From positions 1-64,000 of the IMG/VR virus record IMGVR_UViG_3300009108_000751: a stretch of DNA of 64,000 nucleotides; one strand, 5' to 3'. Made by a program: the position numbers and the translations under genes. The notes beneath the pieces were generated by a model, which worked only from the letters and a program-made list of their open reading frames with translations, was not told the DNA's origin and searched no databases. Below are positions 12,722 to 28,881 of the stretch, piece by piece (position 1 is the stretch's first letter; each line of letters starts with the position of its first letter).

Positions 12722-12722
12722 T

Positions 12723-13588: not shown

Positions 13589-13597
13589 GGGTCTTGT

Positions 13598-13626: not shown

Positions 13627-13653
13627 AGCCCTGAAGATAACAAGGAGCTCCTA

Positions 13654-13848
13654 ATGGATCCCAACAAAGTTCACGTCGTCAATGCTTATACTCGCAAAGT
13701 CTACGGTTCGTTTGACCTGGACATTGATGCACGTCAATACATGCGCAACATGCTCCTGAAGGAGTGCGACGGTCCTAATGATGACGACCGCGAGGTGCCA
13801 AAGATCTGGTGCTTCGATGCGCGTGGAGTTGAGACTACATCCTTCTAG
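13654..13848 (+). CDS. hypothetical protein
   Basis: SD AAGGAG; stop abuts the next promoter. Confidence 0.6.
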   Translation: MDPNKVHVVNAYTRKVYGSFDLDIDARQYMRNMLLKECDGPNDDDREVPKIWCFDARGVETTSF

Positions 13849-13876
13849 GTGTAAGTTTCAGAGAACCTGTTATAAT
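13849..13876 (+). promoter_or_regulatory. GTGTAA-N16-TATAAT promoter
   Basis: GTGTAA 13849-13854, TATAAT 13871-13876 (only 16-bp copy). Confidence 0.75.
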
Positions 13877-13907
13877 ATAAGCGAATCATATGCCTGGGGA
13901 GGCAACA

Positions 13908-14177
13908 ATGGCTGAGAATAAAGAATACATTTCTGGCGACTATGTCGCGATCATTGCATCGATGGACGATGTTGAGAGTGTGGATGAACTGGTTGAGATG
14001 GTGAAGGGTGGCCAACGCCCCGAGCATTCCAGCCTCTTCCGCTTTGAGCTGGACACTGACACACCGCAGCTGGTCAACCTGGTCGGTCGCGGTTACTTCT
14101 TCGAGAACGGTTGGAGCATGGACCACACGGTGTCGTGGATCGGTCCGGAAAGCGAGGTCCGCGATGCCCAAGCCTAA
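13908..14177 (+). CDS. hypothetical acidic protein
   Basis: SD GGGGAGG, ATG 13908. Confidence 0.6.
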   Translation: MAENKEYISGDYVAIIASMDDVESVDELVEMVKGGQRPEHSSLFRFELDTDTPQLVNLVGRGYFFENGWSMDHTVSWIGPESEVRDAQA

Positions 14178-14382
14178 CAAGTATCTCTACCTCTACGTCG
14201 TCCAAGGCAACTACGGTGGCTATGGATGGGAGGACCTTGCGGAGAGCGAATCCTACCAGGAAGCTCACTACAACCTCAAGGAGTACCGCATCTCAAGTGG
14301 CCCAGCTCCACATCGTATCATTCAGCGACGTGAGCCCAACCCGGCATACTTCAGCAAGCAAATGGCAGCTCCCGGTTTCTAG
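14164..14382 (+). CDS. small phage protein (YVVQGNYG..GWEDL...LKEYR pattern)
   Basis: SD GAGG, ATG 14164. Confidence 0.65.
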   Translation: MPKPNKYLYLYVVQGNYGGYGWEDLAESESYQEAHYNLKEYRISSGPAPHRIIQRREPNPAYFSKQMAAPGF

Positions 14383-14410
14383 TGTAACTTCCCGAGCTAG
14401 TAGTTATAAT
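14382..14410 (+). promoter_or_regulatory. GTGTAA-N17-TATAAT promoter
   Basis: GTGTAA 14382-14387, TATAAT 14405-14410. Confidence 0.8.
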
Positions 14411-14441
14411 GAAACGTAAAGGCGTTAAAGGGAAGAAGAAG

Positions 14442-14585
14442 ATGAAGAAGATTCCTAAGATTAGACAAAAGCACGTCAAGGAGATGCTGCTCAATCGCAA
14501 GGATGGTGCTCATCACAATCGTTCCAAGGACGTCAAGCGTGGAAGTTCACGCAAACCCAAGCACAAGGGGAAGCAGGAATGGTAG
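14442..14585 (+). CDS. 47-aa very basic peptide, possibly ArfA/BrfA-like
   Basis: MKKIPKIRQKHVKEMLLNRKDGAHHNRSKDVKRGSSRKPKHKGKQEW; first ORF after a promoter. Confidence 0.5.
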   Translation: MKKIPKIRQKHVKEMLLNRKDGAHHNRSKDVKRGSSRKPKHKGKQEW

Positions 14586-14809
14586 GCAAGAAGGTCAAGT
14601 TGACGGGTAAGAGCCGTCACGGTAAGAACCGGGTTCGTGAGCAAGGTGACGCCTGGGAAGTGGTGGGCGAGAGGGACAGCGTCCAGTTTCGCACCTCGGC
14701 TCCTGGGCCATTCCTCTTACTTCAGTCTGAAAGCACAGGACCTCACGGGCGCCACACTAGATGGGTCAGCTTACAACGTGATCCTGACTTCACCGTGGAG
14801 GTGCTATAA
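14579..14809 (+). CDS. hypothetical protein (SH3-like)
   Basis: MVGKKVKLTGKSRHGKNRVREQG..WEV. Confidence 0.6.
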   Translation: MVGKKVKLTGKSRHGKNRVREQGDAWEVVGERDSVQFRTSAPGPFLLLQSESTGPHGRHTRWVSLQRDPDFTVEVL

Positions 14810-14958
14810 TGTTTGACTTCCTGTTCTACCAAGAAGACATTCCCTCAAAGGGCTACCGAGCTGGTGACCTCAAGCCCGGATACGCAATCGCCGCATTGGC
14901 CCTATGCTTCCTGGCTGGCGCCTACCTGGAAGGACTAGAGCAAATGCAACCTTACTAG
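14809..14958 (+). CDS. 49-aa membrane peptide
   Basis: TAATG coupling, SD GGAGG, hydrophobic C-half. Confidence 0.5.
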   Translation: MFDFLFYQEDIPSKGYRAGDLKPGYAIAALALCFLAGAYLEGLEQMQPY

Positions 14959-14967
14959 CCTATTATA

Positions 14968-14996
14968 GTGTAACCCAAAAGTGGGTAGTGTACAAT
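14968..14996 (+). promoter_or_regulatory. GTGTAA-N17-TACAAT promoter
   Basis: GTGTAA 14968-14973, TACAAT 14991-14996. Confidence 0.75.
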
Positions 14997-15020
14997 AGCG
15001 GCGAATAGGAGGTGCTGGTT

Positions 15021-15477
15021 ATGGATGAATGCAGCATGGTATGTGAGAAGACAGGCGAGGTGCTCGCACGTGAGCCGTTTAGAGAGAACCTGTTGATCAC
15101 GGCTAAAGAGCAAGGCCTGCCAGTTATTAGTAAGCATAGTTTTGCCATTCATGAGAGCACCGTTTTGGTGGATTGTGGGTGTGGTGGAAACATGTATAAG
15201 TGCGGAGTGCAAGCATGAACGATAAGCAAGTAGCATTCTTATGCGGCATTGGCACAATCCTGCTCTTTCCCGCTCTTCCTATCATCGCCCTAGCCTTGGG
15301 TGTTGTTGGCTTCTTGTCACTCAAGCCTAAGGGAAGACGATAATGCAGATCGAACTCACACTCCCTCTCCCTCCTCCCGAGTGGATCGAGCGCATGGAAC
15401 GAGAGCAGCAGCCAGAGATCCAGAATGATCCCATGGTGGACTTCGACATCGACGACGGTGTAACCTTCGACCTATAG
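15021..15477 (+). CDS. three coupled small ORFs: 15021-15218 (Cys-rich), 15215-15343 (membrane), 15343-15477 (acidic, LTLPLPPP)
   Basis: SD AGGAGG; ATGA and TAATG overlaps. Confidence 0.5.
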
Positions 15478-15486
15478 AGATATAAT
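15458..15486 (+). promoter_or_regulatory. GTGTAA-N17-TATAAT promoter
   Basis: GTGTAA 15458-15463, TATAAT 15481-15486. Confidence 0.8.
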
Positions 15487-15509
15487 AGCCCTGAAGATAA
15501 GGAGCTACG

Positions 15510-15692
15510 ATGAGCAAGTCACTAACAGCCATCATCAATCGGTTCGGTGCCAAACGCCTCAAGGGCGATGGCTTCACCCAACGTATCCAGTTTAGCTCCT
15601 CCGGACAGGCACAACGTGCCGTGTGGGAGATCAGCAGCTCCACTGGACGGCAGTGCTGGAGCTCGGGTGACATCGTCGAGGTGCTCAAGTAG
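15510..15692 (+). CDS. hypothetical protein
   Basis: SD AAGGAG; single-gene cassette. Confidence 0.6.
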   Translation: MSKSLTAIINRFGAKRLKGDGFTQRIQFSSSGQAQRAVWEISSSTGRQCWSSGDIVEVLK

Positions 15693-15694
15693 CA

Positions 15695-15723
15695 GTGTAA
15701 GTCTCCAGGGCTAGTGTTATAAT
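15695..15723 (+). promoter_or_regulatory. GTGTAA-N17-TATAAT promoter
   Basis: GTGTAA 15695-15700, TATAAT 15718-15723. Confidence 0.8.
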
Positions 15724-15749
15724 AGTCCCGAAGATAAGGAGATACCGGC

Positions 15750-15920
15750 ATGGCACAGTGGGGAAACTTTACTGGCGGAGCGGCACCACTGGACGAAGCG
15801 CCAATGGACAGCGGCCCGATGTCTCCGGAGATGCAACGGCGCGTTTTCGATATTCTGGTTAGTACCGGTTCGGATCCCGCGGCACTCAAGGCTTCAGGTG
15901 AATACCCGAATGTTGTGTAA
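15750..15920 (+). CDS. 56-aa hypothetical protein
   Basis: SD AAGGAG; its stop is the TAA of the next GTGTAA. Confidence 0.55.
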   Translation: MAQWGNFTGGAAPLDEAPMDSGPMSPEMQRRVFDILVSTGSDPAALKASGEYPNVV

Positions 15921-15943
15921 CTCCCGTTGGTGGATGTTATAAT
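15915..15943 (+). promoter_or_regulatory. GTGTAA-N17-TATAAT promoter
   Basis: GTGTAA 15915-15920, TATAAT 15938-15943. Confidence 0.8.
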
Positions 15944-15964
15944 AAGGGCGAATAGGAGATGATC

Positions 15965-16260
15965 ATGGCAAGCTCACTCAAAACTTTCAAGGTTGGCTAC
16001 TCCAAGAACGTCGGCTATAAGAAGCACGGCAGTCGCACCGTAAAGGCTCGCAACGCCGAGGAAGCCAAGGTCCGAGTTCGGCACATTGTCGATGGCGCCT
16101 TTGGCCTCTACATTCAGGCTCCTCAAGTATGAGTTACGTCATCGAATATCAGGACAAGATGGGTCGACGTTTCCGAGCCGTGGTGGCCATGCTCCCGCAT
16201 TGCATCAAGGCTAAGAAAGCTGAGCTTCGTGCTCAAGGCTATAGCATTGTTGGTTACTAG
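15965..16260 (+). CDS. two coupled small basic ORFs (15965-16132, 16129-16260)
   Basis: SD AGGAG; ATGA overlap; second stop abuts the next promoter. Confidence 0.55.
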
Positions 16261-16289
16261 GTGTAACTCCCGCAAGGGCATGGTACAAT
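16261..16289 (+). promoter_or_regulatory. GTGTAA-N17-TACAAT promoter
   Basis: GTGTAA 16261-16266, TACAAT 16284-16289. Confidence 0.78.
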
Positions 16290-16313
16290 AGCCGTGAAGA
16301 TAAGGAGTTAGAG

Positions 16314-16589
16314 ATGGCCATCAAAACTGATAAGAGCGTAGGATATCATCCTGGACAGCTGGTCAAGTTCTTCAACCCCTTCAAGGAGCCGTATGAGGAG
16401 CAGATCGCCGAAGGCATCGTAACCTCAGTGGATCATTGGATGCAGACGTTGACCGTAGGTATCGGCAAGGCTCAAGCCCAGGAAGCTGAGTGGTTCGTCG
16501 GCGGACACCAGGTGGTGAAGATGAACAACCCTCACATCGAGGTCGTCCCCGACAAGGTGACTCAGATCTCCAACGTGAAAGATGTGTAA
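16314..16589 (+). CDS. hypothetical protein (SH3-like, HPGQLVKF)
   Basis: SD AAGGAG; its stop is the TAA of the next GTGTAA. Confidence 0.65.
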   Translation: MAIKTDKSVGYHPGQLVKFFNPFKEPYEEQIAEGIVTSVDHWMQTLTVGIGKAQAQEAEWFVGGHQVVKMNNPHIEVVPDKVTQISNVKDV

Positions 16590-16612
16590 CTTCGAGAGCT
16601 GTAAGTTATAAT
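16584..16612 (+). promoter_or_regulatory. GTGTAA-N17-TATAAT promoter
   Basis: GTGTAA 16584-16589, TATAAT 16607-16612. Confidence 0.8.
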
Positions 16613-16636
16613 AGTTCCGAAGATAAGGAGTTAGAG

Positions 16637-16942
16637 ATGACGTTGAATAACATTGACACCCAGTTCGCGGTAGCTCGATCAGAGATCCGTGCCCTGATGA
16701 AGCACGTCAACCCCAACACCACCGTAGGTGGCCAGGCCTGTGACGCCTTGCAAGGTATGATCGATGCGCTGGACTCCATCCAGAACGATAGCTATAAGAG
16801 CTCTGACAGCTTTCATCGCTACCCGCTAGATGTTAGAGATCGGCCTCTGCATGCGGATGACGAACCCACCAATCCTAACTTCCGGGCTTTCAAGGACCTG
16901 GAAGACGACGAGGAAATGCGGCAGACCGAAAGGTTGTGCTAG
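16637..16942 (+). CDS. hypothetical protein
   Basis: Leader ending AAGATAAGGAGTTAGAGATG, same as at 16314; ATG 16637. Confidence 0.65.
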   Translation: MTLNNIDTQFAVARSEIRALMKHVNPNTTVGGQACDALQGMIDALDSIQNDSYKSSDSFHRYPLDVRDRPLHADDEPTNPNFRAFKDLEDDEEMRQTERLC

Positions 16943-16947
16943 CACCG

Positions 16948-16976
16948 GTGTAACTCGGCGAGCTACCGGTTATAAT
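16948..16976 (+). promoter_or_regulatory. GTGTAA-N17-TATAAT promoter
   Basis: GTGTAA 16948-16953, TATAAT 16971-16976. Confidence 0.8.
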
Positions 16977-17020
16977 AAAGACGTAATAAGCCAAACAACA
17001 TACCTGGGGAGGTAACAAAC

Positions 17021-17437
17021 ATGGCAAACGCAGAACGCAAAACTTGGATCCACGGATTCTTCCAAAACACATTCAACGCTGAGACTGGCAACTGGCAGCT
17101 CCGTGATAGCCGTAACGAGGCTCTGATCGCAGAAGGTCCCAAGGCCGCTAAGATCGGCAAGCTCGGTGCAGCTATGACCAAGACTGAGAAGGCGTGGGAC
17201 AAGCTCCGCAACCTGGAACGTCAGATGGAACTGGCGCAGCGCGCTTACAGCAAAGCTCACCGCGTGATGTTGGACCTCCAGCTAGACATCGACATGGAAG
17301 AGGCATCTCGGGCTAGCGTGGAAGGACTTCGCGAAGAGACTCGCAAGAGCCTCCTCCGCATCGCTAAGCGACGCAACATCGTTGGCCGTCACAATCTTAC
17401 CAAGGAAGAACTGGTCAATGCGCTAAGTATCGACTAA
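17021..17437 (+). CDS. coiled-coil protein with C-terminal Rho-N/HeH-like motif
   Basis: LLRIAKRRNIVGRHNLTKEELVNAL resembles the Rho termination factor N-terminal HeH. Confidence 0.6.
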   Translation: MANAERKTWIHGFFQNTFNAETGNWQLRDSRNEALIAEGPKAAKIGKLGAAMTKTEKAWDKLRNLERQMELAQRAYSKAHRVMLDLQLDIDMEEASRASVEGLREETRKSLLRIAKRRNIVGRHNLTKEELVNALSID

Positions 17438-17443
17438 GACATC

Positions 17444-17709
17444 ATGGACAGACTAGAGGCAATACTCTTCGTCGTGCTAGGCATCACCGCTTCGGTGGTG
17501 CTTGGCATATTGGGCGAGGCGGTAGAAGAAAGAGTAAGAACCTGGTTGAGAGATCGGAAGTACGGAGATAAGAAGTGATGAGAAAGATCGCGGCGAAGAT
17601 CCTATTCCTACTAGCGAGAGTGTTCCTCAGTAGGGGGATGCTAGTGGGACAGTGGTGCCAGAACAAGGCCATACTCCTGCTCAGCGGTGTAAGTGCGCAT
17701 CGCGAGTGA
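17444..17709 (+). CDS. two small ORFs (17444-17578 membrane peptide; 17578-17709)
   Basis: TGATG coupling; hydrophobic segments. Confidence 0.4.
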
Positions 17710-17715
17710 TATAAT
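17687..17715 (+). promoter_or_regulatory. GTGTAA-N17-TATAAT promoter (last copy seen)
   Basis: GTGTAA 17687-17692, TATAAT 17710-17715. Confidence 0.8.
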
Positions 17716-17730
17716 GTCAGCGAATAGGAG

Positions 17731-17922
17731 ATGATCATGGAAGGCTTGTGGCTCTTAGCTGGATTCTTCGTGGTGTGGTTCGTGGTGGCGTTCTTACGGT
17801 CGTTCATCGTGTACGCGTGGAAGAACACGGTCAAGGTGTTCGGCGTGGTCGTGGGCATGTTCGGTGTCCTGGCCCTAGGTGTCGGTGTTGCCGCACTGGT
17901 CGCCGTACTGGTCTTAGCCTAG
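17731..17922 (+). CDS. two-helix membrane protein
   Basis: SD AGGAG; almost entirely hydrophobic. Confidence 0.6.
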   Translation: MIMEGLWLLAGFFVVWFVVAFLRSFIVYAWKNTVKVFGVVVGMFGVLALGVGVAALVAVLVLA

Positions 17923-17940
17923 TTCCTGCAGAGGGTACTA

Positions 17941-18150
17941 CGCAGGGGGCCTGGACGCAGGGCGCTAGGGGCGCCGGGCCCTTAGGGGGCTAGGCGCAGG
18001 GGGCCCCCGCAAACTGTGTAGGGGGTACCCGGGGTGGGCTTGGCCTAAGTCTAGACTCACTCTGCTCCAGAATTTTCCGGGAACTTTTTTCAATACTAAA
18101 AAGCCCATTTTCACAAAAATCTCTTCGAGAAAATTTTCGAAAACTTTTTC
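17941..18150. repeat. non-coding G-tract block followed by phased A/T tracts
   Basis: Nine G>=3 runs at 17945-18038 (CGCAGGGGGCC twice), then A/T tracts at 18071-18149. Confidence 0.75.
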
Positions 18151-18213
18151 ATGCCCGACATTCGCACGGTACAATTATTATAATTAAGCACATGTACTAG
18201 CAGGAGACATGTA

Positions 18214-18969
18214 ATGTACGATCTAAGAAAACCAGACGGTACCGGTCGGTTCACCTCAGTCGATGAAGCGATGCGTCACGCCCGGTGGGCGTTCCACTGC
18301 GCTAAGAAAGAACAAAGCAGCATCCCTCTCGATCCCACAAATGAAGCGATCCAGCTCTTGAGCCTTCACGGTATGTCAGGATACATGTACCGTCACTTGC
18401 TCAATAACTTGTGTTCTAGGCAGGGAATCACTTACGGGGAGGTAGGTACGTGGAACGGAAGCACCTGGCTCTCAGCGATCTACAATAATCCGCATATCAC
18501 AGCGTGGACATGCGATAACTGGAGTGAGTTCGGTGGGCCTCAGGCGCAGTTTATTGAGAACTACAAGGTAGTTGGCCGATGGAAAGGCCAGGCAGATATT
18601 TTCAAGAACTCAAATCACAACTCACATGAAGAAGATTTCAGAAAGCTAGATTTCGGCATACATGGCCCAATCGACATCTACTTCTTTGATGGGCCGCACA
18701 GCCGAGAAGACCAGAAGGATGGTATCGTCTTAGCGTGGGACGCTCTGGCGCCCATTTCTATCGTCTTAGTCGATGACTGGAACTTGCAGAAGGCGCGCGA
18801 CGGCACATATATGGCATTTGATCAGGTAGGCGCTAACATTCACATGCAAGTCGAGGTTCACACGCCCCCAGACGGGTGGGTCGCATGCGATTGGTCTAAA
18901 CAGACCAAGACAAGATTCGAAACGTCTGAATGGCACAACGGCGCAGCGCTGTTCGTAATCTCTAAGTAG
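18214..18969 (+). CDS. class I SAM-dependent methyltransferase (Methyltransf_24-like)
   Basis: YGEVGTWNGS, DIYFFDGPH, VLVDDWN; SD AGGAG. Confidence 0.7.
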   Translation: MYDLRKPDGTGRFTSVDEAMRHARWAFHCAKKEQSSIPLDPTNEAIQLLSLHGMSGYMYRHLLNNLCSRQGITYGEVGTWNGSTWLSAIYNNPHITAWTCDNWSEFGGPQAQFIENYKVVGRWKGQADIFKNSNHNSHEEDFRKLDFGIHGPIDIYFFDGPHSREDQKDGIVLAWDALAPISIVLVDDWNLQKARDGTYMAFDQVGANIHMQVEVHTPPDGWVACDWSKQTKTRFETSEWHNGAALFVISK

Positions 18970-19558
18970 CACACACCGCTAGACACGCGAGACACAGCCC
19001 GAACACCAGTGTATTCACTACCCTCTCCTCAGTGCGCCTTAAGGCTCGCTTAGTACGGCGCTTCCATCGCCTTCTGCTCTTCTTCGTCGTGATTCTAAAC
19101 ATCCATGAGAACAGCTGCCAGAGTCCCGAGGTTGCTGCGCATATGCAGCGCCAGACCCAATCCACTAAAACCATCATCCCTTGACCGAATGATTCTACGT
19201 GAGAAGGGTCTAACGCGCGCAAGTGTCGAGTGATCTCCGCGGGAGTCGTACGAAACCACTCTTTGCCGGGAACATCCGTTATATGCCTACTCTTCAGTCT
19301 GCTATGCAAGGAGCGCTCTAATAGGGAGGCGTGTTCGCATGAGATCTCCAATAGGAGGATGGGGGTTTCCGCGTTAGACGCCCCGAGCTGCTGCGCTATC
19401 CTACGCTCCGCACTGCCTGCGCGCGTCATGCCCACCTTGATCGGATAGGGACCGGCTGCGCGTTGATACGAGGAGAATGTGTAAGCGTACACCCGTTCGC
19501 TCCCGCGACCCATGCGCCTCGCGCCCTCTGTGATGACTCTGCGTTTCTTTTTTGCCAT
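18962..19558 (-). CDS. GIY-YIG family (T5orf172/MUG113-like) protein with hydrophobic C-terminus
   Basis: VYAY...IKVGMT...RRIAQ...LERSLHSRL...GKEWF. Confidence 0.7.
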   Translation of the reverse strand: MAKKKRRVITEGARRMGRGSERVYAYTFSSYQRAAGPYPIKVGMTRAGSAERRIAQQLGASNAETPILLLEISCEHASLLERSLHSRLKSRHITDVPGKEWFRTTPAEITRHLRALDPSHVESFGQGMMVLVDWVWRCICAATSGLWQLFSWMFRITTKKSRRRWKRRTKRALRRTEERVVNTLVFGLCLACLAVCAT

Positions 19559-19849: not shown

Positions 19850-20833
19850 ATGAAGATAAATGAAGTAGGCCTCCGAGCTATTATTGAAGAAGAACTCAAA
19901 GCTTTCAAAGATCGAAAAAACGTCGCCAACTCGAAACATCCTTCGGATGTGGAACCTGTTGAAGATCCAAATGTTAATGGAATACTCTCAGATGATTTTG
20001 AGCATGTCCCGGAAGATGTCCCCGCAGATGTTGAAAAACCGCAGGCGCGCGTCCAAGACTTGACACCGATCGTTAAAGAGCGCCGATACAGCCTTCGTGC
20101 CTTATTGGAACAGGATCAAGGTGTTACCGCAGAAGATGATCTAGATGGGTGGGCCAAGCAGCCAAAAAATGCTAAAATAGTCCAGGCATGGGCGGATGTC
20201 TTTAAAACAGCAGGAACTACGAAATCAGGAACTGACGATCAGCGCCATGAAACACATAAAATCTTAGCTGCCGTAATGGGACATCCAAAAATAGGTAAAG
20301 ACGAGGATCTAACTACTGTTATGCACAAAATCCAACGGTGGTACCCAGGGCAAGAACGCGGTGAGGTTGAGATAGGTTATGACTTTGATGAGCTTATTGC
20401 CGGCATTCAGAATGCAGCTACATATGCTGGGTATGCTACGGGCGGTAGAGATTCTGCAGGTGAAGTTGATATCAATGAAGCACGTTTTGCAGGCGGGCTT
20501 GGCTTTTCTAACGGTGGCATTTCAGAAGCACATTGTGGATGTGGTGCACCAGATATGAGTATGTCTCACGTCCCATCAGACCACGTTGTAATGGATCTTG
20601 CGGCCGCGGCCAAAGAAGATGAAGAAGTTCGCGATCTAGATCATAGCGATGACGAAGGATCAATGGCTCGATCTCAGTTACGACGTTCTGCTAAATACTC
20701 CCAGAAACTCGAACACATGATTCGTGAATCCGATGACCTTCCTGAGTGGGTTGAGTCCAAGATTACTAAAGCCTCGGACTATCTCGGTTCTGTATATCAC
20801 TACTTGGATTATGAGATCAACGGGAAAAAATAA
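19850..20833 (+). CDS. acidic probable virion/head protein
   Basis: N-terminal MKINEVGLRAIIEEE; C-terminal EGSMARSQL...LPEWVESKITKASDY module recognised from large T4-like phages. Confidence 0.6.
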   Translation: MKINEVGLRAIIEEELKAFKDRKNVANSKHPSDVEPVEDPNVNGILSDDFEHVPEDVPADVEKPQARVQDLTPIVKERRYSLRALLEQDQGVTAEDDLDGWAKQPKNAKIVQAWADVFKTAGTTKSGTDDQRHETHKILAAVMGHPKIGKDEDLTTVMHKIQRWYPGQERGEVEIGYDFDELIAGIQNAATYAGYATGGRDSAGEVDINEARFAGGLGFSNGGISEAHCGCGAPDMSMSHVPSDHVVMDLAAAAKEDEEVRDLDHSDDEGSMARSQLRRSAKYSQKLEHMIRESDDLPEWVESKITKASDYLGSVYHYLDYEINGKK

Positions 20834-20835
20834 GC

Positions 20836-22575
20836 ATGAAGGTTTCTCTCTCCTCTCTTAATACCCTCCTCGAGCAGGTTGAGGAAAAAAACGATATCAT
20901 ACTTTCTGCAGACCGCGGAGATTTCCAGGATGTTATGAAGGGTGATCCCTTTGACTACGAGTATAGCCCGGAGAAAGATAATTTTACAGTTATCGGCCTT
21001 AATAGCAAGCGTGAAAGACTAAGTGATAAAAAAGTTGATCGCCTGGAGAAGGCTGTCGGGAAAAGCTTTGATTCTTCATCTAAAGCTTACCAGACTTTAT
21101 TTAAAAGGATGTCAAAAAAGAAGCCGTCAGGAGCAGTAAAATCATCTGCCGATAAAGATGAAAGAGCCAGAGCCCTTAGCAGACATACGTCTAAATCTGT
21201 AAATGACAGACTTAGATCTCTTAACAGCGAGACAGATCCTGACTTTTTAAAAGCAGAAGCTAAGCGCCTTATATCAGGTACAGGAGTAGAGACTGCGGTC
21301 AAAAAACTTTACTTAAATGCTCTCACATCAAAGGCATGGTTTAATGACTTTAAAAGTGAGTCTCAAAAGGGATTTGATTCGTATAAAGGTGAGCTCAGCT
21401 GGAAGTCGACCGTGATGAAAGTAAAGATAGGAATCGTCTTAACTTTGTGGTTTATAGTCATGGCCGGCGCCTTTGTCCTTAGTGGTGGTACGACTGCTAA
21501 GGCGATGCCGGCTGCAGCTGTTTGGCTGTTCGAGATTTTACTGACCGCTTCCGATATGATTGCCGTTGAGGAGGCTGAGTCTTTATTGCAATCTTGGGAT
21601 TCTGATGAATTTCAAGATTTCGGATTAGCACTATATCCTCTTTTTCTTCTTCCGGAAGTAAAAACTCGCAAAGATCTAAGAAGGCAAGTTGCGAACCTGA
21701 TTGGAGATGACATTCTCCAGCCTTTCGCTTATATTGAATCACCTAGTTTATTCGCAGCGTCGGGTACCGGTTCTTACGAGAAAGAATCAGATGCTACTAT
21801 TCTCTACGATGAGATGGATGGCTTTACCTCAAAGGGAGCTTGGGGAGTTGAAGGTTCTTCCGGAGAAGCTATTGTAGCAGATATCATAAAAAGACGTTCT
21901 GGAAAGCTAGGTGGAAAAAACGACTTGCACAAGCTCTATGACGAGTTCAGCAAGGCCGTAGAGAAGAGAGAAGGACCTCGGGTTCCTGAGCGCCGCGGGG
22001 ATACTATATACTATCACGATCTTATCGACTGGATAGAGGATGAGACTAAGGGTCTTTGGGGCGGTACTCAGTTTGGTGGTGAAGGAAAACTACAAAACGT
22101 TGCCGGGATGGTTCGAAAAGCCCTTAGAGATAATAAAAAAGAAAGATACTCGCCGGGAACGATTCCGGGAGAAACATCCGATGATGCTGCCACGCTTTAC
22201 ACAGCAATGGCAGGAGAAGATATACAGCTTATACCTGGATGGCTTGAAGCTTGGGGCACAGATGAAGATGCCATCGATGGAGTGCTAGATCGTCGAAAAA
22301 GTGATATTCCTGAGCTCTATGCAGAGTTTAATACTTACCTTGCCAGAAAGGGTGAAGCCGATGATGGCGACTTGATTGACTGGCTAAAAGGTGAAGGTGA
22401 GACAAGGTCTGCACAGATAGTTATTAAAGCTCTCAAAGACGAGGGCATGGAAAGATATAAACCTGGTGAACGCCGAAAGTCATCAAAGAGAGATTCTGAA
22501 CGCCGAAATGCATTGCGAACATTGACCCCTGCTGAATTAGATGACTTCAGGGACACCGGGGACGGAGATACATAA
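20836..22575 (+). CDS. probable internal virion protein with hydrophobic hairpin and two annexin-like repeats
   Basis: LYTAMAG...WGTDEDAIDGVL..R...DLIDWLKGE resembles the annexin repeat consensus. Confidence 0.55.
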   Translation: MKVSLSSLNTLLEQVEEKNDIILSADRGDFQDVMKGDPFDYEYSPEKDNFTVIGLNSKRERLSDKKVDRLEKAVGKSFDSSSKAYQTLFKRMSKKKPSGAVKSSADKDERARALSRHTSKSVNDRLRSLNSETDPDFLKAEAKRLISGTGVETAVKKLYLNALTSKAWFNDFKSESQKGFDSYKGELSWKSTVMKVKIGIVLTLWFIVMAGAFVLSGGTTAKAMPAAAVWLFEILLTASDMIAVEEAESLLQSWDSDEFQDFGLALYPLFLLPEVKTRKDLRRQVANLIGDDILQPFAYIESPSLFAASGTGSYEKESDATILYDEMDGFTSKGAWGVEGSSGEAIVADIIKRRSGKLGGKNDLHKLYDEFSKAVEKREGPRVPERRGDTIYYHDLIDWIEDETKGLWGGTQFGGEGKLQNVAGMVRKALRDNKKERYSPGTIPGETSDDAATLYTAMAGEDIQLIPGWLEAWGTDEDAIDGVLDRRKSDIPELYAEFNTYLARKGEADDGDLIDWLKGEGETRSAQIVIKALKDEGMERYKPGERRKSSKRDSERRNALRTLTPAELDDFRDTGDGDT

Positions 22576-24837
22576 ATGAAAATAAAACTAAATCTTAGCT
22601 CGCTGAATGAAGAACTAGAAACAAGCAAAGACCCACTTAACGAGGTACTAAGGCAATTAGGCAGCTTTTGGAAGCACCTCTCTACGGCTGGTAAATTAGT
22701 AAGACTTGACGACTTTGCAGACGTGGTTAGTAGATCAAGAAGAGTACTCGATAATCTTGAACTACCTAGAAAATTGGCCGCGGCAGGACTTGACAGTAAA
22801 GTCATTTTTAGAAATATTTTTGATTCTAACCCACAGCTTGAAAAACAAATGAATGAAGTTATTGCATCTGTTGTGGATCAACTAAGAAGAGGAGAAGCTG
22901 TCCCTCTCGGGGATGGAAGAACTTCTACAGGAGCTGCACGGATCTCTTTTGACGGAAGCGTAGATTTCCCGGAAGGCCTAATTGATGCTTCTGGAAAGCC
23001 TATTCCTAGCGGCCCTACCCCCATTAAAATTTACATGGCAATCGACAAAGACGGAGTTATTGAGGGATCTGCAGGTATCGGTGCAACAGGACGACGTCGT
23101 TCAATGAAGTCGTGGAAAGAAAGCGGAGGAAAAGCAAGTTCGGGTACCCGGGCGGCAACCCGAAGAGGTGCTGATGCTGCCGACCAGACCTCTTCCCTAC
23201 ACCCCGAGGATCTAAAGTGGTTGGAGGAGAATAACATCGATAATGCGTCTGCGAGAGAGTTCTATGAAAAGAAGGTGCTTAGTATCAGAACGACAATTGC
23301 ATCGGACCCGGCGGCCGCCGAGGTTTTGATTCCTTATTTGGAAGCAATTCAAACAATTGTTAAAAGAATACAAGATGGCAATGTGGTGGTTCTAAACGCA
23401 GATCAGACCAAGAAGATCTTCAACAAGATGGAAAACAAGATAGTTCAAGCAGCCGAAGATGCTGGCAAGATTAAGCCTGGTGAAGAATTATATCTTCCTC
23501 TAGTAGATGAGGCCGGAAGGGTAGTCATTAATCAAGATGGGCAAACGGCGATCATTGTCTTGGGAGAGGGTGAAACCGTTTATGCAACTGGTAGAGTAGC
23601 AGATATTAGATACACTAAGTCGGGACAGTCCAGGCTCTCAGGAGGAGGAGAGCTGAACGTGCTCAAGCTAGCTGACGAGCTCGGGGAGATGGTACAGGCT
23701 ATGGAAAACCTTAATAATGCTAACAGAACTTTTTATCAAGCGTGGAAAAGATTTCAAGAACGATGGGAAGCGGCCGGAGACGACAGGTGGCGTAAATTTG
23801 ATATTCTTCTTAAATGGAGGGAGGAGGCCTGGGAAGGGTATAAGAATATTTTTAATCAAGAGTTTAAATTATGGATGGTACCCTGGGCAGATGATGCAAT
23901 CAAGTTCAGTGATCTACCTGCCTGGAAGAAAGCTATGGCCGGTGTTGATTTCTTTGGCGGGTTTGGTGGGACAAAGATGTTCGCGGCTGGGTTGACCTCG
24001 ATCCTACGATCATCAGGAAAAGTGTCCAGATCTTATGGGTTAGGTGCATCAAGAAGTGCTGCAAAGCTATTTCTAGTGATACAGGGTAGCTACTACGCGA
24101 TGATGACTTTCTGGATTATAACGTACATCTTGTCAGACAGCCTCGAGGAAGAGAGAAAAAACTATGAATTTGTCATGAATCCTCCGGAGGGTGCTGATGC
24201 TCGAAAACTTCTAATTGAGTACCTCCATAGCCTAACGGATTTTTATAAAAAACATAATGAGGTCATGCCAAAATGGAATGTGGATATGTCTCTACAGCAA
24301 CTTCGATATGCTGTCAAAGAAACTCATAAAAATTATTTAAAGATTGTTGAGGATAAGTCCGGGGCTTCTCCAGCGGAAATATATTCCTTTCACCAAAATG
24401 TTGGTATTCCATTAATTCCTGATAGTGTCTGGGATTTGGTAGAGAATTATTATGGTGATGTTGAAAATATTGCTGATCTTTCTCCTGAAGATCGAAAGAT
24501 AGCTAATGATGAACATCGGGAAGCAGGAAGCGCTCTTGATAAAATCCAGCAAACTTCTGATGATGCTCTCGAAAAGGTTCGAGGGCTAGGGGTGGATTTC
24601 GGTGTAGGAAAAGAAAAGGCAAAGAGGGGTCAGAAACCTAGGCCTAAGATTGATCCTAAAGCTAAAACACCAACACAGGGAACACCAAGCGATCCGGGCA
24701 CACAGGATAGCTCTTTAGGAGATCTATCTGGGATTGATGATTCCCTTTTTGAAATCTTTAACACTGGAAAACCTATAAGTATTAAAGTTAAAAGCTCCTC
24801 GCCGCGGGTGAGAGTTAATATTACGGAGAAGAAGTAA
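22576..24837 (+). CDS. large hypothetical protein, probable virion/ejected protein
   Basis: 753 aa, MKIKLNLSSLNEE N-terminus, internal hydrophobic helices. Confidence 0.6.
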   Translation: MKIKLNLSSLNEELETSKDPLNEVLRQLGSFWKHLSTAGKLVRLDDFADVVSRSRRVLDNLELPRKLAAAGLDSKVIFRNIFDSNPQLEKQMNEVIASVVDQLRRGEAVPLGDGRTSTGAARISFDGSVDFPEGLIDASGKPIPSGPTPIKIYMAIDKDGVIEGSAGIGATGRRRSMKSWKESGGKASSGTRAATRRGADAADQTSSLHPEDLKWLEENNIDNASAREFYEKKVLSIRTTIASDPAAAEVLIPYLEAIQTIVKRIQDGNVVVLNADQTKKIFNKMENKIVQAAEDAGKIKPGEELYLPLVDEAGRVVINQDGQTAIIVLGEGETVYATGRVADIRYTKSGQSRLSGGGELNVLKLADELGEMVQAMENLNNANRTFYQAWKRFQERWEAAGDDRWRKFDILLKWREEAWEGYKNIFNQEFKLWMVPWADDAIKFSDLPAWKKAMAGVDFFGGFGGTKMFAAGLTSILRSSGKVSRSYGLGASRSAAKLFLVIQGSYYAMMTFWIITYILSDSLEEERKNYEFVMNPPEGADARKLLIEYLHSLTDFYKKHNEVMPKWNVDMSLQQLRYAVKETHKNYLKIVEDKSGASPAEIYSFHQNVGIPLIPDSVWDLVENYYGDVENIADLSPEDRKIANDEHREAGSALDKIQQTSDDALEKVRGLGVDFGVGKEKAKRGQKPRPKIDPKAKTPTQGTPSDPGTQDSSLGDLSGIDDSLFEIFNTGKPISIKVKSSSPRVRVNITEKK

Positions 24838-25196
24838 TGAAGATCAATGCGACACAACTGAGGAAGATTATCCTCCAAGAGATGTGCGATATGCACCGCC
24901 AACATGACACACATGATCAAGGTCATGAAGATTTAATGTCTGCAGTAATGGTCGCTGCTGGTGATTGCCCAATCAAGGCCAGAGCTCTTCTTCAAAGAAT
25001 GCTGCAGCATGTTGAACCCAGGGCTCATGAGAAAGAAGCGGGTATGCGTCAAGATATCCCTAATCCTGCAACTTCTGGTGAAATTCCTCGAGGTGAAAGA
25101 CTGATGGGTGACGATGCTTACATGGAGCAAAAGAAACCTACTGCAGTTGATGGACCAGGATTCTCTAAGGGCATATTTGGCCCTGGATTTAGATAA
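24837..25196 (+). CDS. probable internal head protein
   Basis: MKINATQLRKIILQE N-terminus; TAATG coupling. Confidence 0.55.
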   Translation: MKINATQLRKIILQEMCDMHRQHDTHDQGHEDLMSAVMVAAGDCPIKARALLQRMLQHVEPRAHEKEAGMRQDIPNPATSGEIPRGERLMGDDAYMEQKKPTAVDGPGFSKGIFGPGFR

Positions 25197-26358: not shown

Positions 26359-27528
26359 ATGAGTACTTTTAGAAAACACAAATCTATAGCAGATCGATCA
26401 GCCACCGATCGATCGCGCCATAAGCAAAAAATTGAAAAAGCTTTAAAAGAAGGTATTCGAAATATCGTTGCCGAAGAGTCCATTATTGGCCAAGATGGTA
26501 AGAAAAAAGTTCGGATTCCTGTAAAGGGCATAAAAGAATACCAATTTATCTACGGTGACAACTCTAAAAAGGTTGGTTCCGCACCGGGCAAAGATATTCA
26601 CAGAGGTCAAAAGATTGCTGAGGATAAGGAAGGCAAGAAATCAGGTAACAAGCCTGGGGATAAACCAGGTGAGGAGTTCTACGACGTAGAGATTACATTA
26701 GAGGAGCTTGCAGAATACCTCTTTAGTGATCTTGAGCTTCCTGATCTAGATAAGAAGAAATTTAAGTTTCTGTCGTCCGACACTTTTAGAAGAAAAGGTG
26801 TTCGGCCTAAAGGTATTAGGCCGCGCCTCTCTAAGAAAGAGACTCTTAAACAGAAGATTCGTCGAAAGAAAATGTCTCAAAAAGCTGGGACCTTTAACGA
26901 AGAAGAAGATGAAAGATTTCCTTTTCATGAAGATGATCTTCGATACAAGCATTTCAAAGTAAAAGAAACAGAGATCTCATCTGCAGCAATATTTTTCATT
27001 ATGGATATCTCAGGTTCAATGAGTACTGAAAAGAAGTACATTGCCCGGAGCTTCTTCTTTCTTCTCTACCAGTTTTTGCGACACAAATATGATAATGTTG
27101 AAGTTGTATTTATTGCTCATACAACCACGGCAAAAGAAGTCAGTGAGAATGATTTCTTCAGTCTAGCACCATCCGGTGGAACATTTATCTCACCTGCACT
27201 TGATCTTACACTCGAGGTCGTTGAGAAAAGATATCACCCCAGCAATTGGAATATATACTCTTTTCATTGTTCAGATGGGGATAACTGGTCAGAAGATGAG
27301 GAAAAAGCTTTCAATGCTTCTAAGAAACTTAAGTCAATATCACAGCTTTACGCTTTTTGTGAAATAGATCCTAACGGTGAGTCATCACAGTGGCGCCAGA
27401 ATAATAATTCTAGAATGTGGGAAATTTATCAACCACTTGTAGACAAAGCTTTTAAGACTTTAAAGATGGTTAATGCTAAAGATATCTGGCCTTCATTTAA
27501 GAAGCTTTTTGGTGGGAGATCAGAATAA
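26359..27528 (+). CDS. yeaH: YeaH/YhbH (DUF444) vWA protein
   Basis: DRSRHKQKI, VRIPVKG, DDLRY, MDISGSM (MIDAS), SGGT, SDGDNW. Confidence 0.9.
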   Translation: MSTFRKHKSIADRSATDRSRHKQKIEKALKEGIRNIVAEESIIGQDGKKKVRIPVKGIKEYQFIYGDNSKKVGSAPGKDIHRGQKIAEDKEGKKSGNKPGDKPGEEFYDVEITLEELAEYLFSDLELPDLDKKKFKFLSSDTFRRKGVRPKGIRPRLSKKETLKQKIRRKKMSQKAGTFNEEEDERFPFHEDDLRYKHFKVKETEISSAAIFFIMDISGSMSTEKKYIARSFFFLLYQFLRHKYDNVEVVFIAHTTTAKEVSENDFFSLAPSGGTFISPALDLTLEVVEKRYHPSNWNIYSFHCSDGDNWSEDEEKAFNASKKLKSISQLYAFCEIDPNGESSQWRQNNNSRMWEIYQPLVDKAFKTLKMVNAKDIWPSFKKLFGGRSE

Positions 27529-28835
27529 TGGGATGGACATTTGAAGAACTCCATGCATGGGACGAAAAAATTGTTAAGCTAGCCAAGAAATATAACCTTG
27601 ACTGGTATCCAATTGACTACGAAGTTTGCGACTATCATGATATGATCGGTTACATGTCATACATTGGAATGCCCACTCACTACCAGCATTGGTCGTACGG
27701 CAAGTCCTTTGAACGAACACACACCATGTATAACCTCGGCATGGAGGGATTACCCTACGAGATGATCATCAATAGCGATCCCTCGATATCGTATTTGATG
27801 ACTGAGAACCCTCTTCCTTTGCAAGTTCTTATCATGGCACACTGCGTTGGTCACTCCGACTTCTTCAAAAATAATCGGATGTTTAAGCATACCGATGCAG
27901 CTAATGTGATATCAAGGTTTCGTAATTCTGCAAAGAGGATCAAGAAATATTCTGACAATCCTCACATCGGTGTTGAAGCTGTTGAAAAAGTAATAGATGC
28001 ATGTCATGCTTTAAAGTATCATAACTATCGCGAGTTTGGAATTAGTCGAAAATCTCATCAAGAAATAAAGCAAGCCTATGTTGATATTGCTAACTTTAAA
28101 CCTGAGAAACTCCCAGAAGATTTTGATATCAATAAGATCCCATTAGAGCCTGACTATGATATTCTTGGATTTATAGGAAAACATTCTAGAAATTTAGAGG
28201 ACTGGGAAAGAGATATTATTGATATTGTTCGTCAAGAATCAATGTACTTTATGCCGCAGGCAATGACAAAAATAATGAATGAAGGATGGGCATCATTTTG
28301 GCACTATAAAATAATGTCAGAGCTTGATCTCCCGCAAGAGTTTCACTTGTCTTTTCTTAAATTTCATAATCAGGTTCTCCGGCCAATGGTAGGAAGAATT
28401 AATCCCTATCATCTAGGATTCACAATTTTTAAATGGATTGAGAAAAATAAAGGGCTAGAGGAATGTTTTATAGCAAGGTCTTCTCATAATGACGAATCTT
28501 TTATCAGGTCATATCTCAACAAAGAAATATGTGAAGAACTTAATCTTTTCTCTTACTCTAAAAAGAAAAAAGAATGGACGATAGACGATATATCGGATCA
28601 AGATGGCTGGAAACAGATTAGATCCGATCTCATAAAAAATGTAGGCCTTAACTCTTTGCCAAATATTTATGTCAAGGAGCTTCAAAAGGATCAAACGCTG
28701 GTTTTAGAACACGAGCATGATGGTAGGGATCTAGATCTAGATTACGCACACAATGTATGTGATCATCTTTTAGACCTGTGGGGCGATGACTTTAAATTCT
28801 TTACTGTTATCGAAGATGAGCCTTTCGAGATTTAA
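27528..28835 (+). CDS. spoVR: SpoVR/YcgB family protein
   Basis: HWSYGK, YEMIINSDP, MAHCVGHSDFFKNN, TKIMNEGWASFWH, NPYHLG. Confidence 0.92.
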   Translation: MGWTFEELHAWDEKIVKLAKKYNLDWYPIDYEVCDYHDMIGYMSYIGMPTHYQHWSYGKSFERTHTMYNLGMEGLPYEMIINSDPSISYLMTENPLPLQVLIMAHCVGHSDFFKNNRMFKHTDAANVISRFRNSAKRIKKYSDNPHIGVEAVEKVIDACHALKYHNYREFGISRKSHQEIKQAYVDIANFKPEKLPEDFDINKIPLEPDYDILGFIGKHSRNLEDWERDIIDIVRQESMYFMPQAMTKIMNEGWASFWHYKIMSELDLPQEFHLSFLKFHNQVLRPMVGRINPYHLGFTIFKWIEKNKGLEECFIARSSHNDESFIRSYLNKEICEELNLFSYSKKKKEWTIDDISDQDGWKQIRSDLIKNVGLNSLPNIYVKELQKDQTLVLEHEHDGRDLDLDYAHNVCDHLLDLWGDDFKFFTVIEDEPFEI

Positions 28836-28881
28836 ACTCCTACATATTAGTGTGTATTATTGAAAGTGTGGAGCATCAAGA

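What the first reader, a model, noticed from the sequence alone, without database searches (positions are those of the whole stretch)
21790..22434. Annexin-like repeats in a probable phage virion protein
Seen: repeat 2 reads DAATLYTAMAG-(insert)-WGTDEDAIDGVLDRRKSDIPELYAEF...DLIDWLKGE; repeat 1 reads DATILYDEMDG...WG...EAIVADIIKRR...LHKLYDEF...DLIDWIEDE. The same protein has a long hydrophobic hairpin upstream. Known: the annexin repeat consensus is DA..L..AMKG.GTDE..II.IL..R.....DL...LKSE, with GxGT and a distal acidic residue binding Ca2+ and anionic phospholipid. Annexins are mainly eukaryotic with scattered bacterial members. Inference: Ca2+-triggered membrane docking of an ejected protein during genome entry.
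Basis: partly seen in the sequence, partly recalled or inferred. Interest (0 to 1): 0.66.

Follow-up and report, generated by a model that had tools for sequence, protein, structure and literature searches.

The report
Annexin-type repeats in a marine phage
A gene of an uncultured marine T4-like jumbo phage encodes a membrane-hairpin protein ending in two divergent but genuine annexin-type repeats. It also carries an N-terminal tag that looks like a T4 capsid-targeting peptide, and this appears to be the first annexin-family domain described in a virus.

Summary
ORF 20836-22575 (+, 579 aa) carries two related about 95-125-aa repeats (aa 317-441 and 449-544) downstream of a hydrophobic helical hairpin (aa 196-246).

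In this protein both Ca2+-binding (AB) loops carry Trp-containing insertions, so canonical Ca2+ binding is uncertain.

The genome is a marine T4-like jumbo phage with a gp21-type prohead protease and a gp23-type capsid protein. The protein and its three operon neighbours begin with a tag, MK[IV]..L..[IL][IL].E. Ten ORFs of the genome share it, as do dozens of small metagenomic single-annexin-repeat proteins. It ends in the gp21 cleavage motif [LI]-x-E at Glu 13/14.

The ejected virion-protein idea is therefore plausible but only inferred. I found no cultured phage with a homologue and no paper describing viral annexins.

The parts
19850..20833 (+). Gene A (327 aa), first gene of a four-gene same-strand cassette. 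It begins MKINEVGLRAIIEEEL (tag with I-I-E at 11-13).
   Evidence: Homologues lie directly upstream of the target's homologues in L005, L006 and L007.
20836..22575 (+). Gene B, the target ORF (579 aa, P0001): tag, alpha/beta N-domain, helical linker, hydrophobic hairpin, two annexin-type repeats and a charged tail.
20836..20874 (+). N-terminal tag MKVSLSSLNTLLE (aa 1-13), ending in L-L-E, a candidate gp21-type cleavage site. Putative capsid-targeting propeptide.
   Evidence: T4 precedent in PMC9026906.
20893..21120 (+). Conserved alpha/beta N-domain (aa 20-95, pLDDT 82-92). It also occurs behind the same tag in proteins with unrelated C-termini (P0014, P0015, P0017, P0018, P0033) and at the C-terminus of P0022.
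21421..21573 (+). Hydrophobic helical hairpin (aa 196-246), conserved across the wider family (P0011, P0035, P0095, P0038, P0021).
21784..22158 (+). Annexin-type repeat 1 (aa 317-441), degenerate. The AB loop is expanded and the GT is lost. There is a beta-hairpin insert between helices C and D. The distal acidic residue E403 is kept.
21823..21861 (+). AB-loop expansion of repeat 1 (FTSKGAWGVEGSS, aa 330-342), Trp-containing and low pLDDT.
22180..22467 (+). Annexin-type repeat 2 (aa 449-544): five helices, with the DAxxLYxAMxG...GTDE..I..VL.RR...LY.EF...DLIDWL.GE motif set.
22216..22251 (+). 12-aa insert EDIQLIPGWLEA (aa 461-472) inside the Ca2+-binding AB loop of repeat 2. It is absent from orthologue P0004 and from all other family members aligned, and present in P0002, P0003 and P0005.
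   Evidence: There is no DNA-level trace of a tandem duplication.
22576..24837 (+). Gene C (753 aa). Its start abuts the stop of gene B. It begins MKIKLNLSSLNEELE and has one moderately hydrophobic segment around aa 507.
24837..25196 (+). Gene D (119 aa). Its start overlaps the stop of gene C. It begins MKINATQLRKIILQEM (tag).

Best explanation
Gene B encodes a modular membrane protein of a marine T4-like jumbo phage. Its C-terminal half consists of two divergent repeats of the annexin superfamily (shown). It is the two-repeat, hairpin-bearing member of a large, so far undescribed phage branch of annexin-like repeats.

Most likely mechanism (inferred):
1. The N-terminal 13-residue tag acts like the T4 capsid-targeting sequence. 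It brings the protein into the prohead core, and the gp21-type protease removes it after L-L-E13.
2. The protein travels in the head, in seawater-level Ca2+, and leaves with the DNA at infection.
3. In the host envelope the hydrophobic hairpin inserts into a membrane. The two annexin repeats lie on the bilayer surface through their AB loops, which here carry Trp-rich insertions, possibly helped by Ca2+ bridging to anionic lipid via the conserved acidic residues E403 and E520.
4. With the co-transcribed tagged neighbours A, C and D, it would stabilise, seal or organise the membrane at the genome-entry site.
For: Annexin homology:
- Orthologue P0004 hits Pfam Annexin at E 1.8e-4 (22 bits).
- P0004 matches solved annexins A5, XII, VI and A4 at E 5e-8 to 1e-5.
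- The C-terminal profile hits annexin A4 at E 0.001.
- The family profile finds 238 proteins at E<=1e-3. Of the top 62, 34 are Pfam Annexin.
- 17 of 25 phage-type repeats hit Pfam Annexin, best 1.4e-8.

Fold:
- The AF2 model (pLDDT 73) has two five-helix units.
- In an exhaustive search of 48,161 chains, the top six are annexins, giardins or the astrotactin-2 chain.

Phage and T4-type head:
- The record is a 235,681-base virus record.
- It has Peptidase_S77 at 88 bits and Gp23 at 211 bits.

Tag:
- 10 ORFs of the genome start with it and none carries it internally.
- One tagged ORF lies between the protease and the capsid gene. This is conserved in relatives G002 and G003.
- 40 of 47 tagged metagenomic relatives have [LI]-x-E with Glu at position 13 or 14, against 5.6% background.
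- T4 CTS and L/I-X-E cleavage precedent: PMC9026906.

Membrane:
- Hairpin Kyte-Doolittle peaks are 2.39 and 1.74.
- The architecture of hairpin plus annexin repeat is conserved down to about 25-30% identity.

Operon and habitat:
- The A-B-C-D order is conserved in three other contigs.
- The gene is found in marine and seawater metagenomes.
Against: - Pfam's Annexin model does not detect this protein itself, even at E<=10.
- Both AB loops are disrupted, so Ca2+ binding may be lost.
- There is no virion proteome, no cleavage data and no homologue in 50,697 GenBank phage records.
- No PHROG structural family hits it.
- The T4 late-promoter motif TATAAATA is not enriched in the genome, and none was seen in the intergenic sequence upstream of the cassette.
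- A protein with a transmembrane hairpin must stay soluble inside a prohead, which is unproven here.
- The cassette lies about 95 kb from the head module, next to non-structural genes.
Confidence: 0.5

Rival explanations
1. The protein is a non-virion, intracellularly made inner-membrane protein. It is expressed during infection and anchored by its hairpin. Its annexin repeats shape, patch or protect the host membrane, for example against lysis from without, superinfection or membrane-targeting abortive-infection systems. The shared N-terminal helix serves something other than capsid targeting, such as oligomerisation, membrane targeting or translation efficiency.
For: - The cassette sits among non-structural genes: methyltransferase and T5orf172 upstream, and DUF444, SpoVR, PrkA, PhoH and glycan genes downstream. 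It is far from the head module at 113-125 kb.
- No structural PHROG hits it.
- No T4-type late promoter was found.
- Annexins are classically membrane-repair and membrane-organising proteins, and bacterial annexins can carry TM segments (PMC3894181).
Against: - It does not explain why the tag is strictly N-terminal, ends in [LI]-x-E at a fixed position, is shared by many unrelated small proteins, and resembles the N-terminus of the ORF next to the prohead protease.
- Cytoplasmic free Ca2+ is far too low for classical annexin docking (established knowledge). The repeats would need to face the periplasm.
Confidence: 0.3
2. The protein is a packaged internal head protein whose annexin-like repeats do not bind lipid. 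Instead they act as a cation-binding or DNA-phosphate-bridging filler, or as a decoy inside the capsid or the host cytoplasm, like the diverse T4 internal proteins. The hydrophobic segment is a buried core or an oligomerisation element.
For: - The evidence for the tag and the gp21-type protease is the same as in the main explanation.
- Most tagged relatives are small (median 213 aa), have a single repeat and mostly lack a hydrophobic segment, like T4 IPs.
- One tagged ORF of the same genome has an EF-hand-like loop, hinting at a Ca2+ theme among the cargo.
Against: - The hairpin has clear transmembrane-grade hydrophobicity (2.39).
- The hairpin is conserved together with the repeat across distant relatives.
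- The AB-loop insertions add Trp, Leu and Ile, which is typical of interfacial membrane loops.
Confidence: 0.12
3. The annexin resemblance is convergent. In this view the repeats are a generic helical repeat with a chance DA..L..A..G.GTDE motif.
For: - Pfam Annexin misses P0001.
- The Atlas shape search returned TPR and ankyrin repeats.
Against: - Profile searches connect the family to canonical multi-repeat annexins at E down to 1e-33, and Pfam confirms these.
- 17 of 25 phage repeats hit Pfam Annexin directly.
- P0004 matches all four repeats of annexin A5.
- Annexin-fold chains fill the top ranks out of 48,161 representatives.
Confidence: 0.05

Closest known systems
Annexin repeat (Pfam PF00191); eukaryotic annexins A4, A5, A2 and XII, and giardins
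   Same: - It has an about 70-residue five-helix unit.
- It has the motif set DA..L..AM.G.GTDE..I..IL..R, ...Y.., DL...L..E.G and a fifth amphipathic helix.
- An acidic residue sits at the position of the bidentate Ca2+ ligand, with DLIDWLKGE aligning with annexin A5's DLLDDLKSE.
- Repeat 2 is 29% identical to annexin V repeat IV in the structural alignment.
   Different: - It has two repeats rather than a four-repeat core.
- The inter-repeat arrangement does not superpose on annexin repeats I-II (rmsd 7.6 A).
- Both AB loops carry insertions, so the G-x-G-T Ca2+ loop is broken.
- Repeat 1 has a beta-hairpin between helices C and D.
- The repeats are fused to a TM hairpin, an alpha/beta N-domain and an N-terminal tag.
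- It is encoded by a phage.
Bacterial annexins (Kodavali et al. 2014, PMC3894181)
   Same: The number of repeats varies, including single-domain proteins. The repeats are fused to unrelated domains and, in some, to predicted transmembrane regions. The sequences are divergent.
   Different: That survey reported no annexins in archaea or viruses. The phage branch has its own signature (DL[IV]xWLxDDGM) and the N-terminal tag.
T4 internal proteins IPI, IPII, IPIII and Alt, and their capsid-targeting sequence (PMC9026906, PMC3012670)
   Same: - A short N-terminal peptide starting MK is shared by otherwise unrelated proteins of one phage.
- The peptide ends in L/I-x-E, the gp21 cleavage motif.
- The genome encodes a gp21-type protease and a gp23-type capsid protein.
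   Different: - The tag is 13-16 residues with a different sequence (MKIT..LR.II.EE against MKTYQEFIAE).
- No experimental evidence of packaging or cleavage exists.
- The cargo here includes a large hairpin-bearing protein, unlike the small soluble T4 IPs.
Membrane-active ejection proteins of other tailed phages (T7 gp14/15/16, P22 gp7/16/20, T5 Pb2)
   Same: These are virion-carried proteins that enter the host envelope at infection and contain membrane-inserting segments. This rests on my own knowledge and was not tested here.
   Different: No sequence or fold relation was detected. BFVD hits to tape-measure and internal virion proteins had probability of 0.18 or less. None of these proteins has annexin repeats.

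Membership tests
Annexin superfamily (PF00191) | Significant match to the family's sequence model | tested here: inconclusive
   P0001 has no hit at E<=10. Orthologue P0004 scores 22.0 bits against a cutoff of 25, E 1.8e-4. 17 of 25 phage-type repeats hit at E<=0.01, best 1.4e-8. The reverse profile search retrieves canonical annexins. Homology is established transitively, not directly.
Annexin superfamily (PF00191) | About 70-residue right-handed five-helix repeat (helices A-E) | tested here: met
Annexin superfamily (PF00191) | Type II Ca2+ site: (M/L)-K-G-x-G-T in the AB loop plus an acidic residue about 38 residues downstream | tested here: not met
   Repeat 2 reads AMAG-[12-aa insert]-WGTDED, so the first Gly is displaced. 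Repeat 1 reads MDG-FTSKGAWGVEGSS-GE, with no GT. The distal acidic residues E403 and E520 are kept. Orthologues P0004 (KGLGTDEE) and P0011 (AGLGT, EGMGT) have the complete loop.
Annexin superfamily (PF00191) | Ca2+-dependent binding to anionic phospholipid | not testable with these tools
   This needs liposome co-sedimentation or flotation with and without Ca2+.
Annexin superfamily (PF00191) | Four-repeat core (eukaryotic annexins) | tested here: not met
   Only two repeats are present. This feature is not required for bacterial annexins (PMC3894181).
T4-type capsid-targeted internal (ejected) proteins | Genome encodes a gp21-type prohead protease and a gp23-type capsid | tested here: met
   Peptidase_S77 scores 87.8 bits at G000 118362-118781. 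Gp23 scores 211 bits at 122835-124484.
T4-type capsid-targeted internal (ejected) proteins | Short N-terminal propeptide shared among unrelated proteins and ending in L/I-x-E | tested here: met
   10 ORFs in the genome carry it, and it is strictly N-terminal. P0001 has L11-L12-E13. 40 of 47 tagged relatives have [LI]xE with Glu at 13 or 14, against 5.6% background. The tag sequence itself differs from T4's MKTYQEFIAE.
T4-type capsid-targeted internal (ejected) proteins | Presence in the mature head, N-terminal cleavage, and ejection into the host | not testable with these tools
   No cultured relative and no proteome exist. There is no homologue in 50,697 GenBank phage records.

The most novel reading that the evidence does not exclude
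Marine T4-like jumbo phages may have a cargo system of their own. In this reading, a 13-16-residue N-terminal tag (MKIT..LR.II.EE, cut at [LI]-x-E) loads a diverse set of proteins into the capsid. A phage-specific branch of annexin repeats would be one of its commonest payloads. Gene B, together with the tagged genes A, C and D, would be ejected and would assemble a Ca2+-assisted, hairpin-anchored annexin patch or conduit in the host envelope at genome entry. These would be the first viral annexins and a new class of ejection protein.
Probability: 0.3. Interest if true: 0.8.

Novelty: new variant of a known kind. Interest (0 to 1): 0.62.

Why it matters
Annexins are regarded as essentially eukaryotic, with scattered bacterial members. 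The one systematic survey I could read found none in viruses (PMC3894181). I found no paper linking annexins to phage genomes.

A sizeable phage branch bears on two things:
- It bears on the open question of where annexins came from and how they moved between domains of life.
- It offers minimal one- and two-repeat annexin units for biophysics.

The recurrent N-terminal tag, if it is a capsid-targeting and cleavage signal, would let one read the packaged and ejected proteome of an uncultured group of ocean phages directly from sequence. It would also give a testable handle on how large myoviruses deal with the host membrane at entry.

Tried and rejected
- Pfam and PHROGs on P0001 gave nothing.
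- phmmer of P0001 against the PDB gave only a chance hit to a baseplate wedge protein over the hydrophobic region, E 0.72.
- tblastn of P0001, P0017, P0020, P0023 and P0140 against GenBank phages gave no match.
- Foldseek with the full-length model against the PDB and BFVD gave nothing significant. The tape-measure and internal-virion rows had probability of 0.18 or less, and I do not use them.
- The ESM Atlas searches (by features on aa 1-300, by shape on the Atlas's own whole-protein model and on my C-terminal model) were uninformative.
- I tested whether genes B and C are paralogues. BLASTP shows no similarity.
- I tested whether P0021, a 1237-aa protein, is a B-C fusion. Its N-half is homologous to B (E 4e-20). 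Its C-half has no detectable similarity to gene C (E 0.45). I therefore make no Rosetta-stone claim.
- I tested whether the 12-aa insert arose by tandem duplication of helix A. Only 9 of 36 nucleotides are identical, so there is no support. HMMER does offer an alternative register in which the insert plays helix A.
- I tested for T4 late promoters. TATAAATA occurs 2 and 4 times against about 8 expected per strand, and none was seen in the intergenic sequence upstream of the cassette. The sigma-70 and terminator scan was at background.
- PHROGs and Pfam on the other tagged ORFs and on head-module ORFs gave no families apart from a sub-threshold EF-hand.
- A literature string search for the tag sequence returned 0 papers.
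- Complex prediction and read laying were not used, because no claim here needs them.

Full report
**What is there**

The finding lies in one ORF, window 20836-22575 on the + strand, 579 aa (P0001). Their coordinates (aa 319-533) cover two related units.

The two units align to each other at 28% identity over 102 columns, BLASTP E 0.001. An HMM built from other phage repeats, excluding this protein and its close orthologue, scores aa 311-402 at 32 bits and aa 418-552 at 88 bits. With the fifth helix included, the units are aa 317-441 and aa 449-544.

Upstream is a hydrophobic hairpin at aa 196-246, with Kyte-Doolittle peaks of 2.39 and 1.74.

**Whose gene it is**

- The window is the first 64 kb of a 235,681-base IMG/VR virus record, estimated about 70% complete.
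- The record encodes a T4 gp21-type prohead protease (Peptidase_S77, 88 bits) and a gp23-type major capsid protein (211 bits).
- These sit in a head module ordered terminase, portal, protease, small ORFs, scaffold-like ORF, capsid.
- The capsid protein is nearest to an uncultured 484-kb phage (50%), Flavobacterium phage immuto (45%) and Microcystis phage Mel-JY01. This is a distant T4-like jumbo phage.
- The gene is held by marine and seawater metagenomes.

**Is it annexin?**

Directly, Pfam says no. P0001 has no hit even at E<=10, and phmmer against the PDB finds nothing.

Relatives close the gap:
- The word search gave seven homologues. P0004 (58% identical, 536 aa) lacks the 12-residue insert and reads DAATLYAAIKGLGTDEEAIEAVLSRRKS.
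- P0004 hits Pfam Annexin at E 1.8e-4, 22 bits, just under the 25-bit cutoff.
- P0004 matches solved annexins A5, XII, VI, A8 and A4 at E 5e-8 to 1e-5, with matches to several annexin repeats.
- A profile of the C-terminal halves hits annexin A4 at E 0.001.
- The family profile searched against 1.84 billion representatives found 238 proteins at E<=1e-3. Of the top 62, 34 are Pfam Annexin members.
- Of 25 phage-type repeats scanned one by one, 17 hit Pfam Annexin at E<=0.01, best 1.4e-8.

Structure agrees:
- An AlphaFold2 model of aa 300-560 (pLDDT 73, pTM 0.69) has two five-helix units.
- Foldseek ranks annexin A4 first, but at E 0.028 and TM 0.30.

**How it departs from annexins**

- There are two repeats, not four. 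They do not superpose on annexin repeats I-II as a pair (rmsd 7.6 A).
- The Ca2+-binding AB loop is altered in both repeats.
  - Repeat 2 has EDIQLIPGWLEA inserted between AMAG and WGTDED.
  - Repeat 1 reads MDG-FTSKGAWGVEGSS-GE and has lost the GT.
  - In the models these loops have pLDDT below 50.
- The distal acidic residue is kept in both (DLIDWIEDE, DLIDWLKGE). By my count from the annexin A5 sequence, it aligns with the Ca2+-ligating Glu in DLLDDLKSE.
- Orthologues P0004 and P0011 keep intact G-x-G-T loops in one or both repeats.
- The insertions add Trp, Leu, Ile and Pro on what is the membrane-facing side in annexins. This suits interfacial insertion (inference).

**A phage branch of annexin repeats**

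Aligning repeats from the hits shows a shared signature: sxDAxxLYxAMxGxGTDExxIxxVxxKRxxDLxxLYxEF...DLIxWLxDDGMDxEAxxVxxAL. G, GT, L and WL are invariant.

Among the 146 non-self representatives, sorted by my own sequence patterns:
- about 50 look like canonical multi-repeat annexins;
- 53 begin with a tag of the type MKITRRQLRRIIxE, and 36 of these carry one or two G-x-G-T repeats;
- the tagged proteins are short, with a median length of 213 aa.

A conserved architecture of tag, linker, hydrophobic hairpin, a W..E.F..F..A.YPL element and annexin repeat(s) persists to about 25-30% identity in P0011, P0035, P0095 and the N-half of P0021.

Two of three IMG/VR contigs with such repeats carry Peptidase_S77. 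The third is a 36% fragment. The target is the only annexin-like ORF in the 235 kb of its own genome. No GenBank phage record holds a homologue.

**The tag and the virion question**

Ten ORFs of the genome start with MK[ILV]..x.L..[IL][IL].E, and none carries the motif internally. They are:
- genes A, B, C and D of the cassette at 19850-25196;
- an ORF between the protease and the scaffold-like ORF (119349-119765);
- one ORF at 180110;
- four ORFs at 221-228 kb.

In relatives, the ORF after the protease has the same kind of N-terminus.

I then defined the tag without any acidic residue. With that definition, 40 of 47 tagged relatives place [LI]-x-E at its end, with Glu at position 13 or 14. 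The background is 5.6% for hydrophobic pairs elsewhere in the same proteins.

In T4, the first 10 residues of IPIII are a capsid-targeting sequence. gp21 removes it after L/I-X-E. The review notes that the CTS may be a general way for T4-like phages to load varied proteins (PMC9026906; PMC3012670). In P0001 the site would be L11-L12-E13.

There is no proteome and no structural PHROG hit. No T4 late promoter was found. The cassette lies far from the head module, among methyltransferase, T5orf172, DUF444, SpoVR, PrkA and glycan genes.

**The cassette**

Genes A-D are contiguous. The start of gene B is two bases after the stop of gene A. The start of gene C abuts the stop of gene B. The start of gene D overlaps the stop of gene C. 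Their order is conserved in three other contigs, including a distant one. Gene C has one moderately hydrophobic segment. I found no sequence relation between B and C.

**Most likely mechanism and rivals**

- Best reading (0.5): a tag-targeted, protease-trimmed head cargo that leaves with the DNA. It anchors by its hairpin and lays its two annexin repeats on the host membrane, with Ca2+ possibly assisting. Seawater holds about 10 mM Ca2+ and a Gram-negative periplasm should be similar (established knowledge). The cytoplasm has far too little Ca2+ for classical annexin docking. This favours action from the periplasmic side.
- Rival 1 (0.3): the same membrane role, but for a protein made and inserted inside the infected cell and not packaged.
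- Rival 2 (0.12): packaged, but not lipid-binding.
- Rival 3 (0.05): the annexin resemblance is convergent.

Separately, I put the annexin-superfamily assignment itself at about 0.9.

**Novelty**

Kodavali et al. 2014 found no annexins in archaea or viruses. My literature searches found nothing on phage annexins or on the tag. I rate this a new variant of a known kind: an annexin-superfamily domain in a new host (phage), a new architecture and a new presumed role.

**Limits**

- All structures are predictions from shallow alignments of 5 and 25 sequences.
- The representative library carries no names or taxonomy, so the 'canonical annexin' label rests on Pfam scans of 62 proteins and, for the remainder, on my own count of G-x-G-T motifs.
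- Counts of tagged proteins depend on my regular expressions.

Noticed in passing
window 26359-30813 (+): A complete triad of DUF444 (YeaH-like), SpoVR (YcgB-like) and PrkA (YeaG-like) lies in this phage genome (E 1e-112, 2e-127 and 2e-148). DUF444 and SpoVR lie at the same place in relatives L005 and L006, and PrkA follows them in L006 (L005 ends inside that gene). It is a bacterial stress or sporulation-type kinase module carried as a phage gene set.
   Followed up: partly
G000 19850, 20836, 22576, 24837, 119349, 180110, 221038, 226335, 226788, 227330 (the first four are window coordinates): Ten ORFs share the strictly N-terminal tag MK[ILV]..L..[IL][IL].E. One lies between the prohead protease and the scaffold-like ORF. 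Three small ones are in tandem at 226335-227725. This is a candidate capsid-targeting and cleavage signal for a whole group of marine T4-like phages.
   Followed up: partly
G000 226788-227321 (outside the window; L010 5888-6418): A tagged 177-aa ORF has an EF-hand-like loop, DSDGDGSLDADEL, directly after the tag. It scores below Pfam's cutoff (EF-hand_1 E 5.8e-4, 19.7 bits against 25.4). It is a second possible Ca2+-binding cargo.
   Followed up: no
window 1-19000 versus 24000-64000: G+C drops from 0.49-0.56 to 0.37-0.44. The target lies in the transition zone at about 0.45. The high-GC part holds a DUF2201 peptidase/VWA protein, a PP-loop ATPase, a PLP enzyme, two Methyltransf_24 genes and a KaiC-like ATPase. 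The KaiC-like ATPase and one methyltransferase are syntenic in relative L005, so a chimeric assembly is unlikely.
   Followed up: partly
window 34711-62000 (+): A PIN-PhoH fusion is followed by a long same-strand glycan-biosynthesis cluster. It includes GT2, GT1 and GT4 glycosyltransferases, GDP-mannose 4,6-dehydratase, a nucleotidyltransferase, a carbamoyltransferase and NeuB sialic-acid synthase. This is an unusually large sugar-pathway block for a phage.
   Followed up: partly
window 30828-32153 (+): A 441-aa ORF matches the PHROG 'chaperonin groEL' family (E 1e-13) but has no Pfam hit. It may be a divergent phage chaperonin.
   Followed up: no
window 18962-19558 (-): A T5orf172/MUG113 (GIY-YIG-like) protein with a basic, hydrophobic C-terminal tail is the only minus-strand gene here. 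It lies divergent from the cassette, and this position is conserved in L005 and L006.
   Followed up: no
alignment A3 (hits): Ten of 62 profile hits match Pfam Myb_DNA-bind_7 (best E 7e-7). I did not check which proteins these are or whether the match covers the annexin-like repeat.
   Followed up: no
L011 1555-3252 and 4388-5140 (IMGVR_UViG_3300020470_006081): Two annexin-repeat proteins lie about 1.1 kb apart on one viral contig. One is 565 aa with a hydrophobic segment and a C-terminal repeat. The other is 250 aa, tagged, with a Pro-rich linker and a C-terminal repeat.
   Followed up: no
G000 122598-124514 (L003 421-2337): The gp23-type capsid protein is 638 aa, and the Pfam Gp23 model matches it in two separated pieces. 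This suggests a large insertion domain.
   Followed up: no
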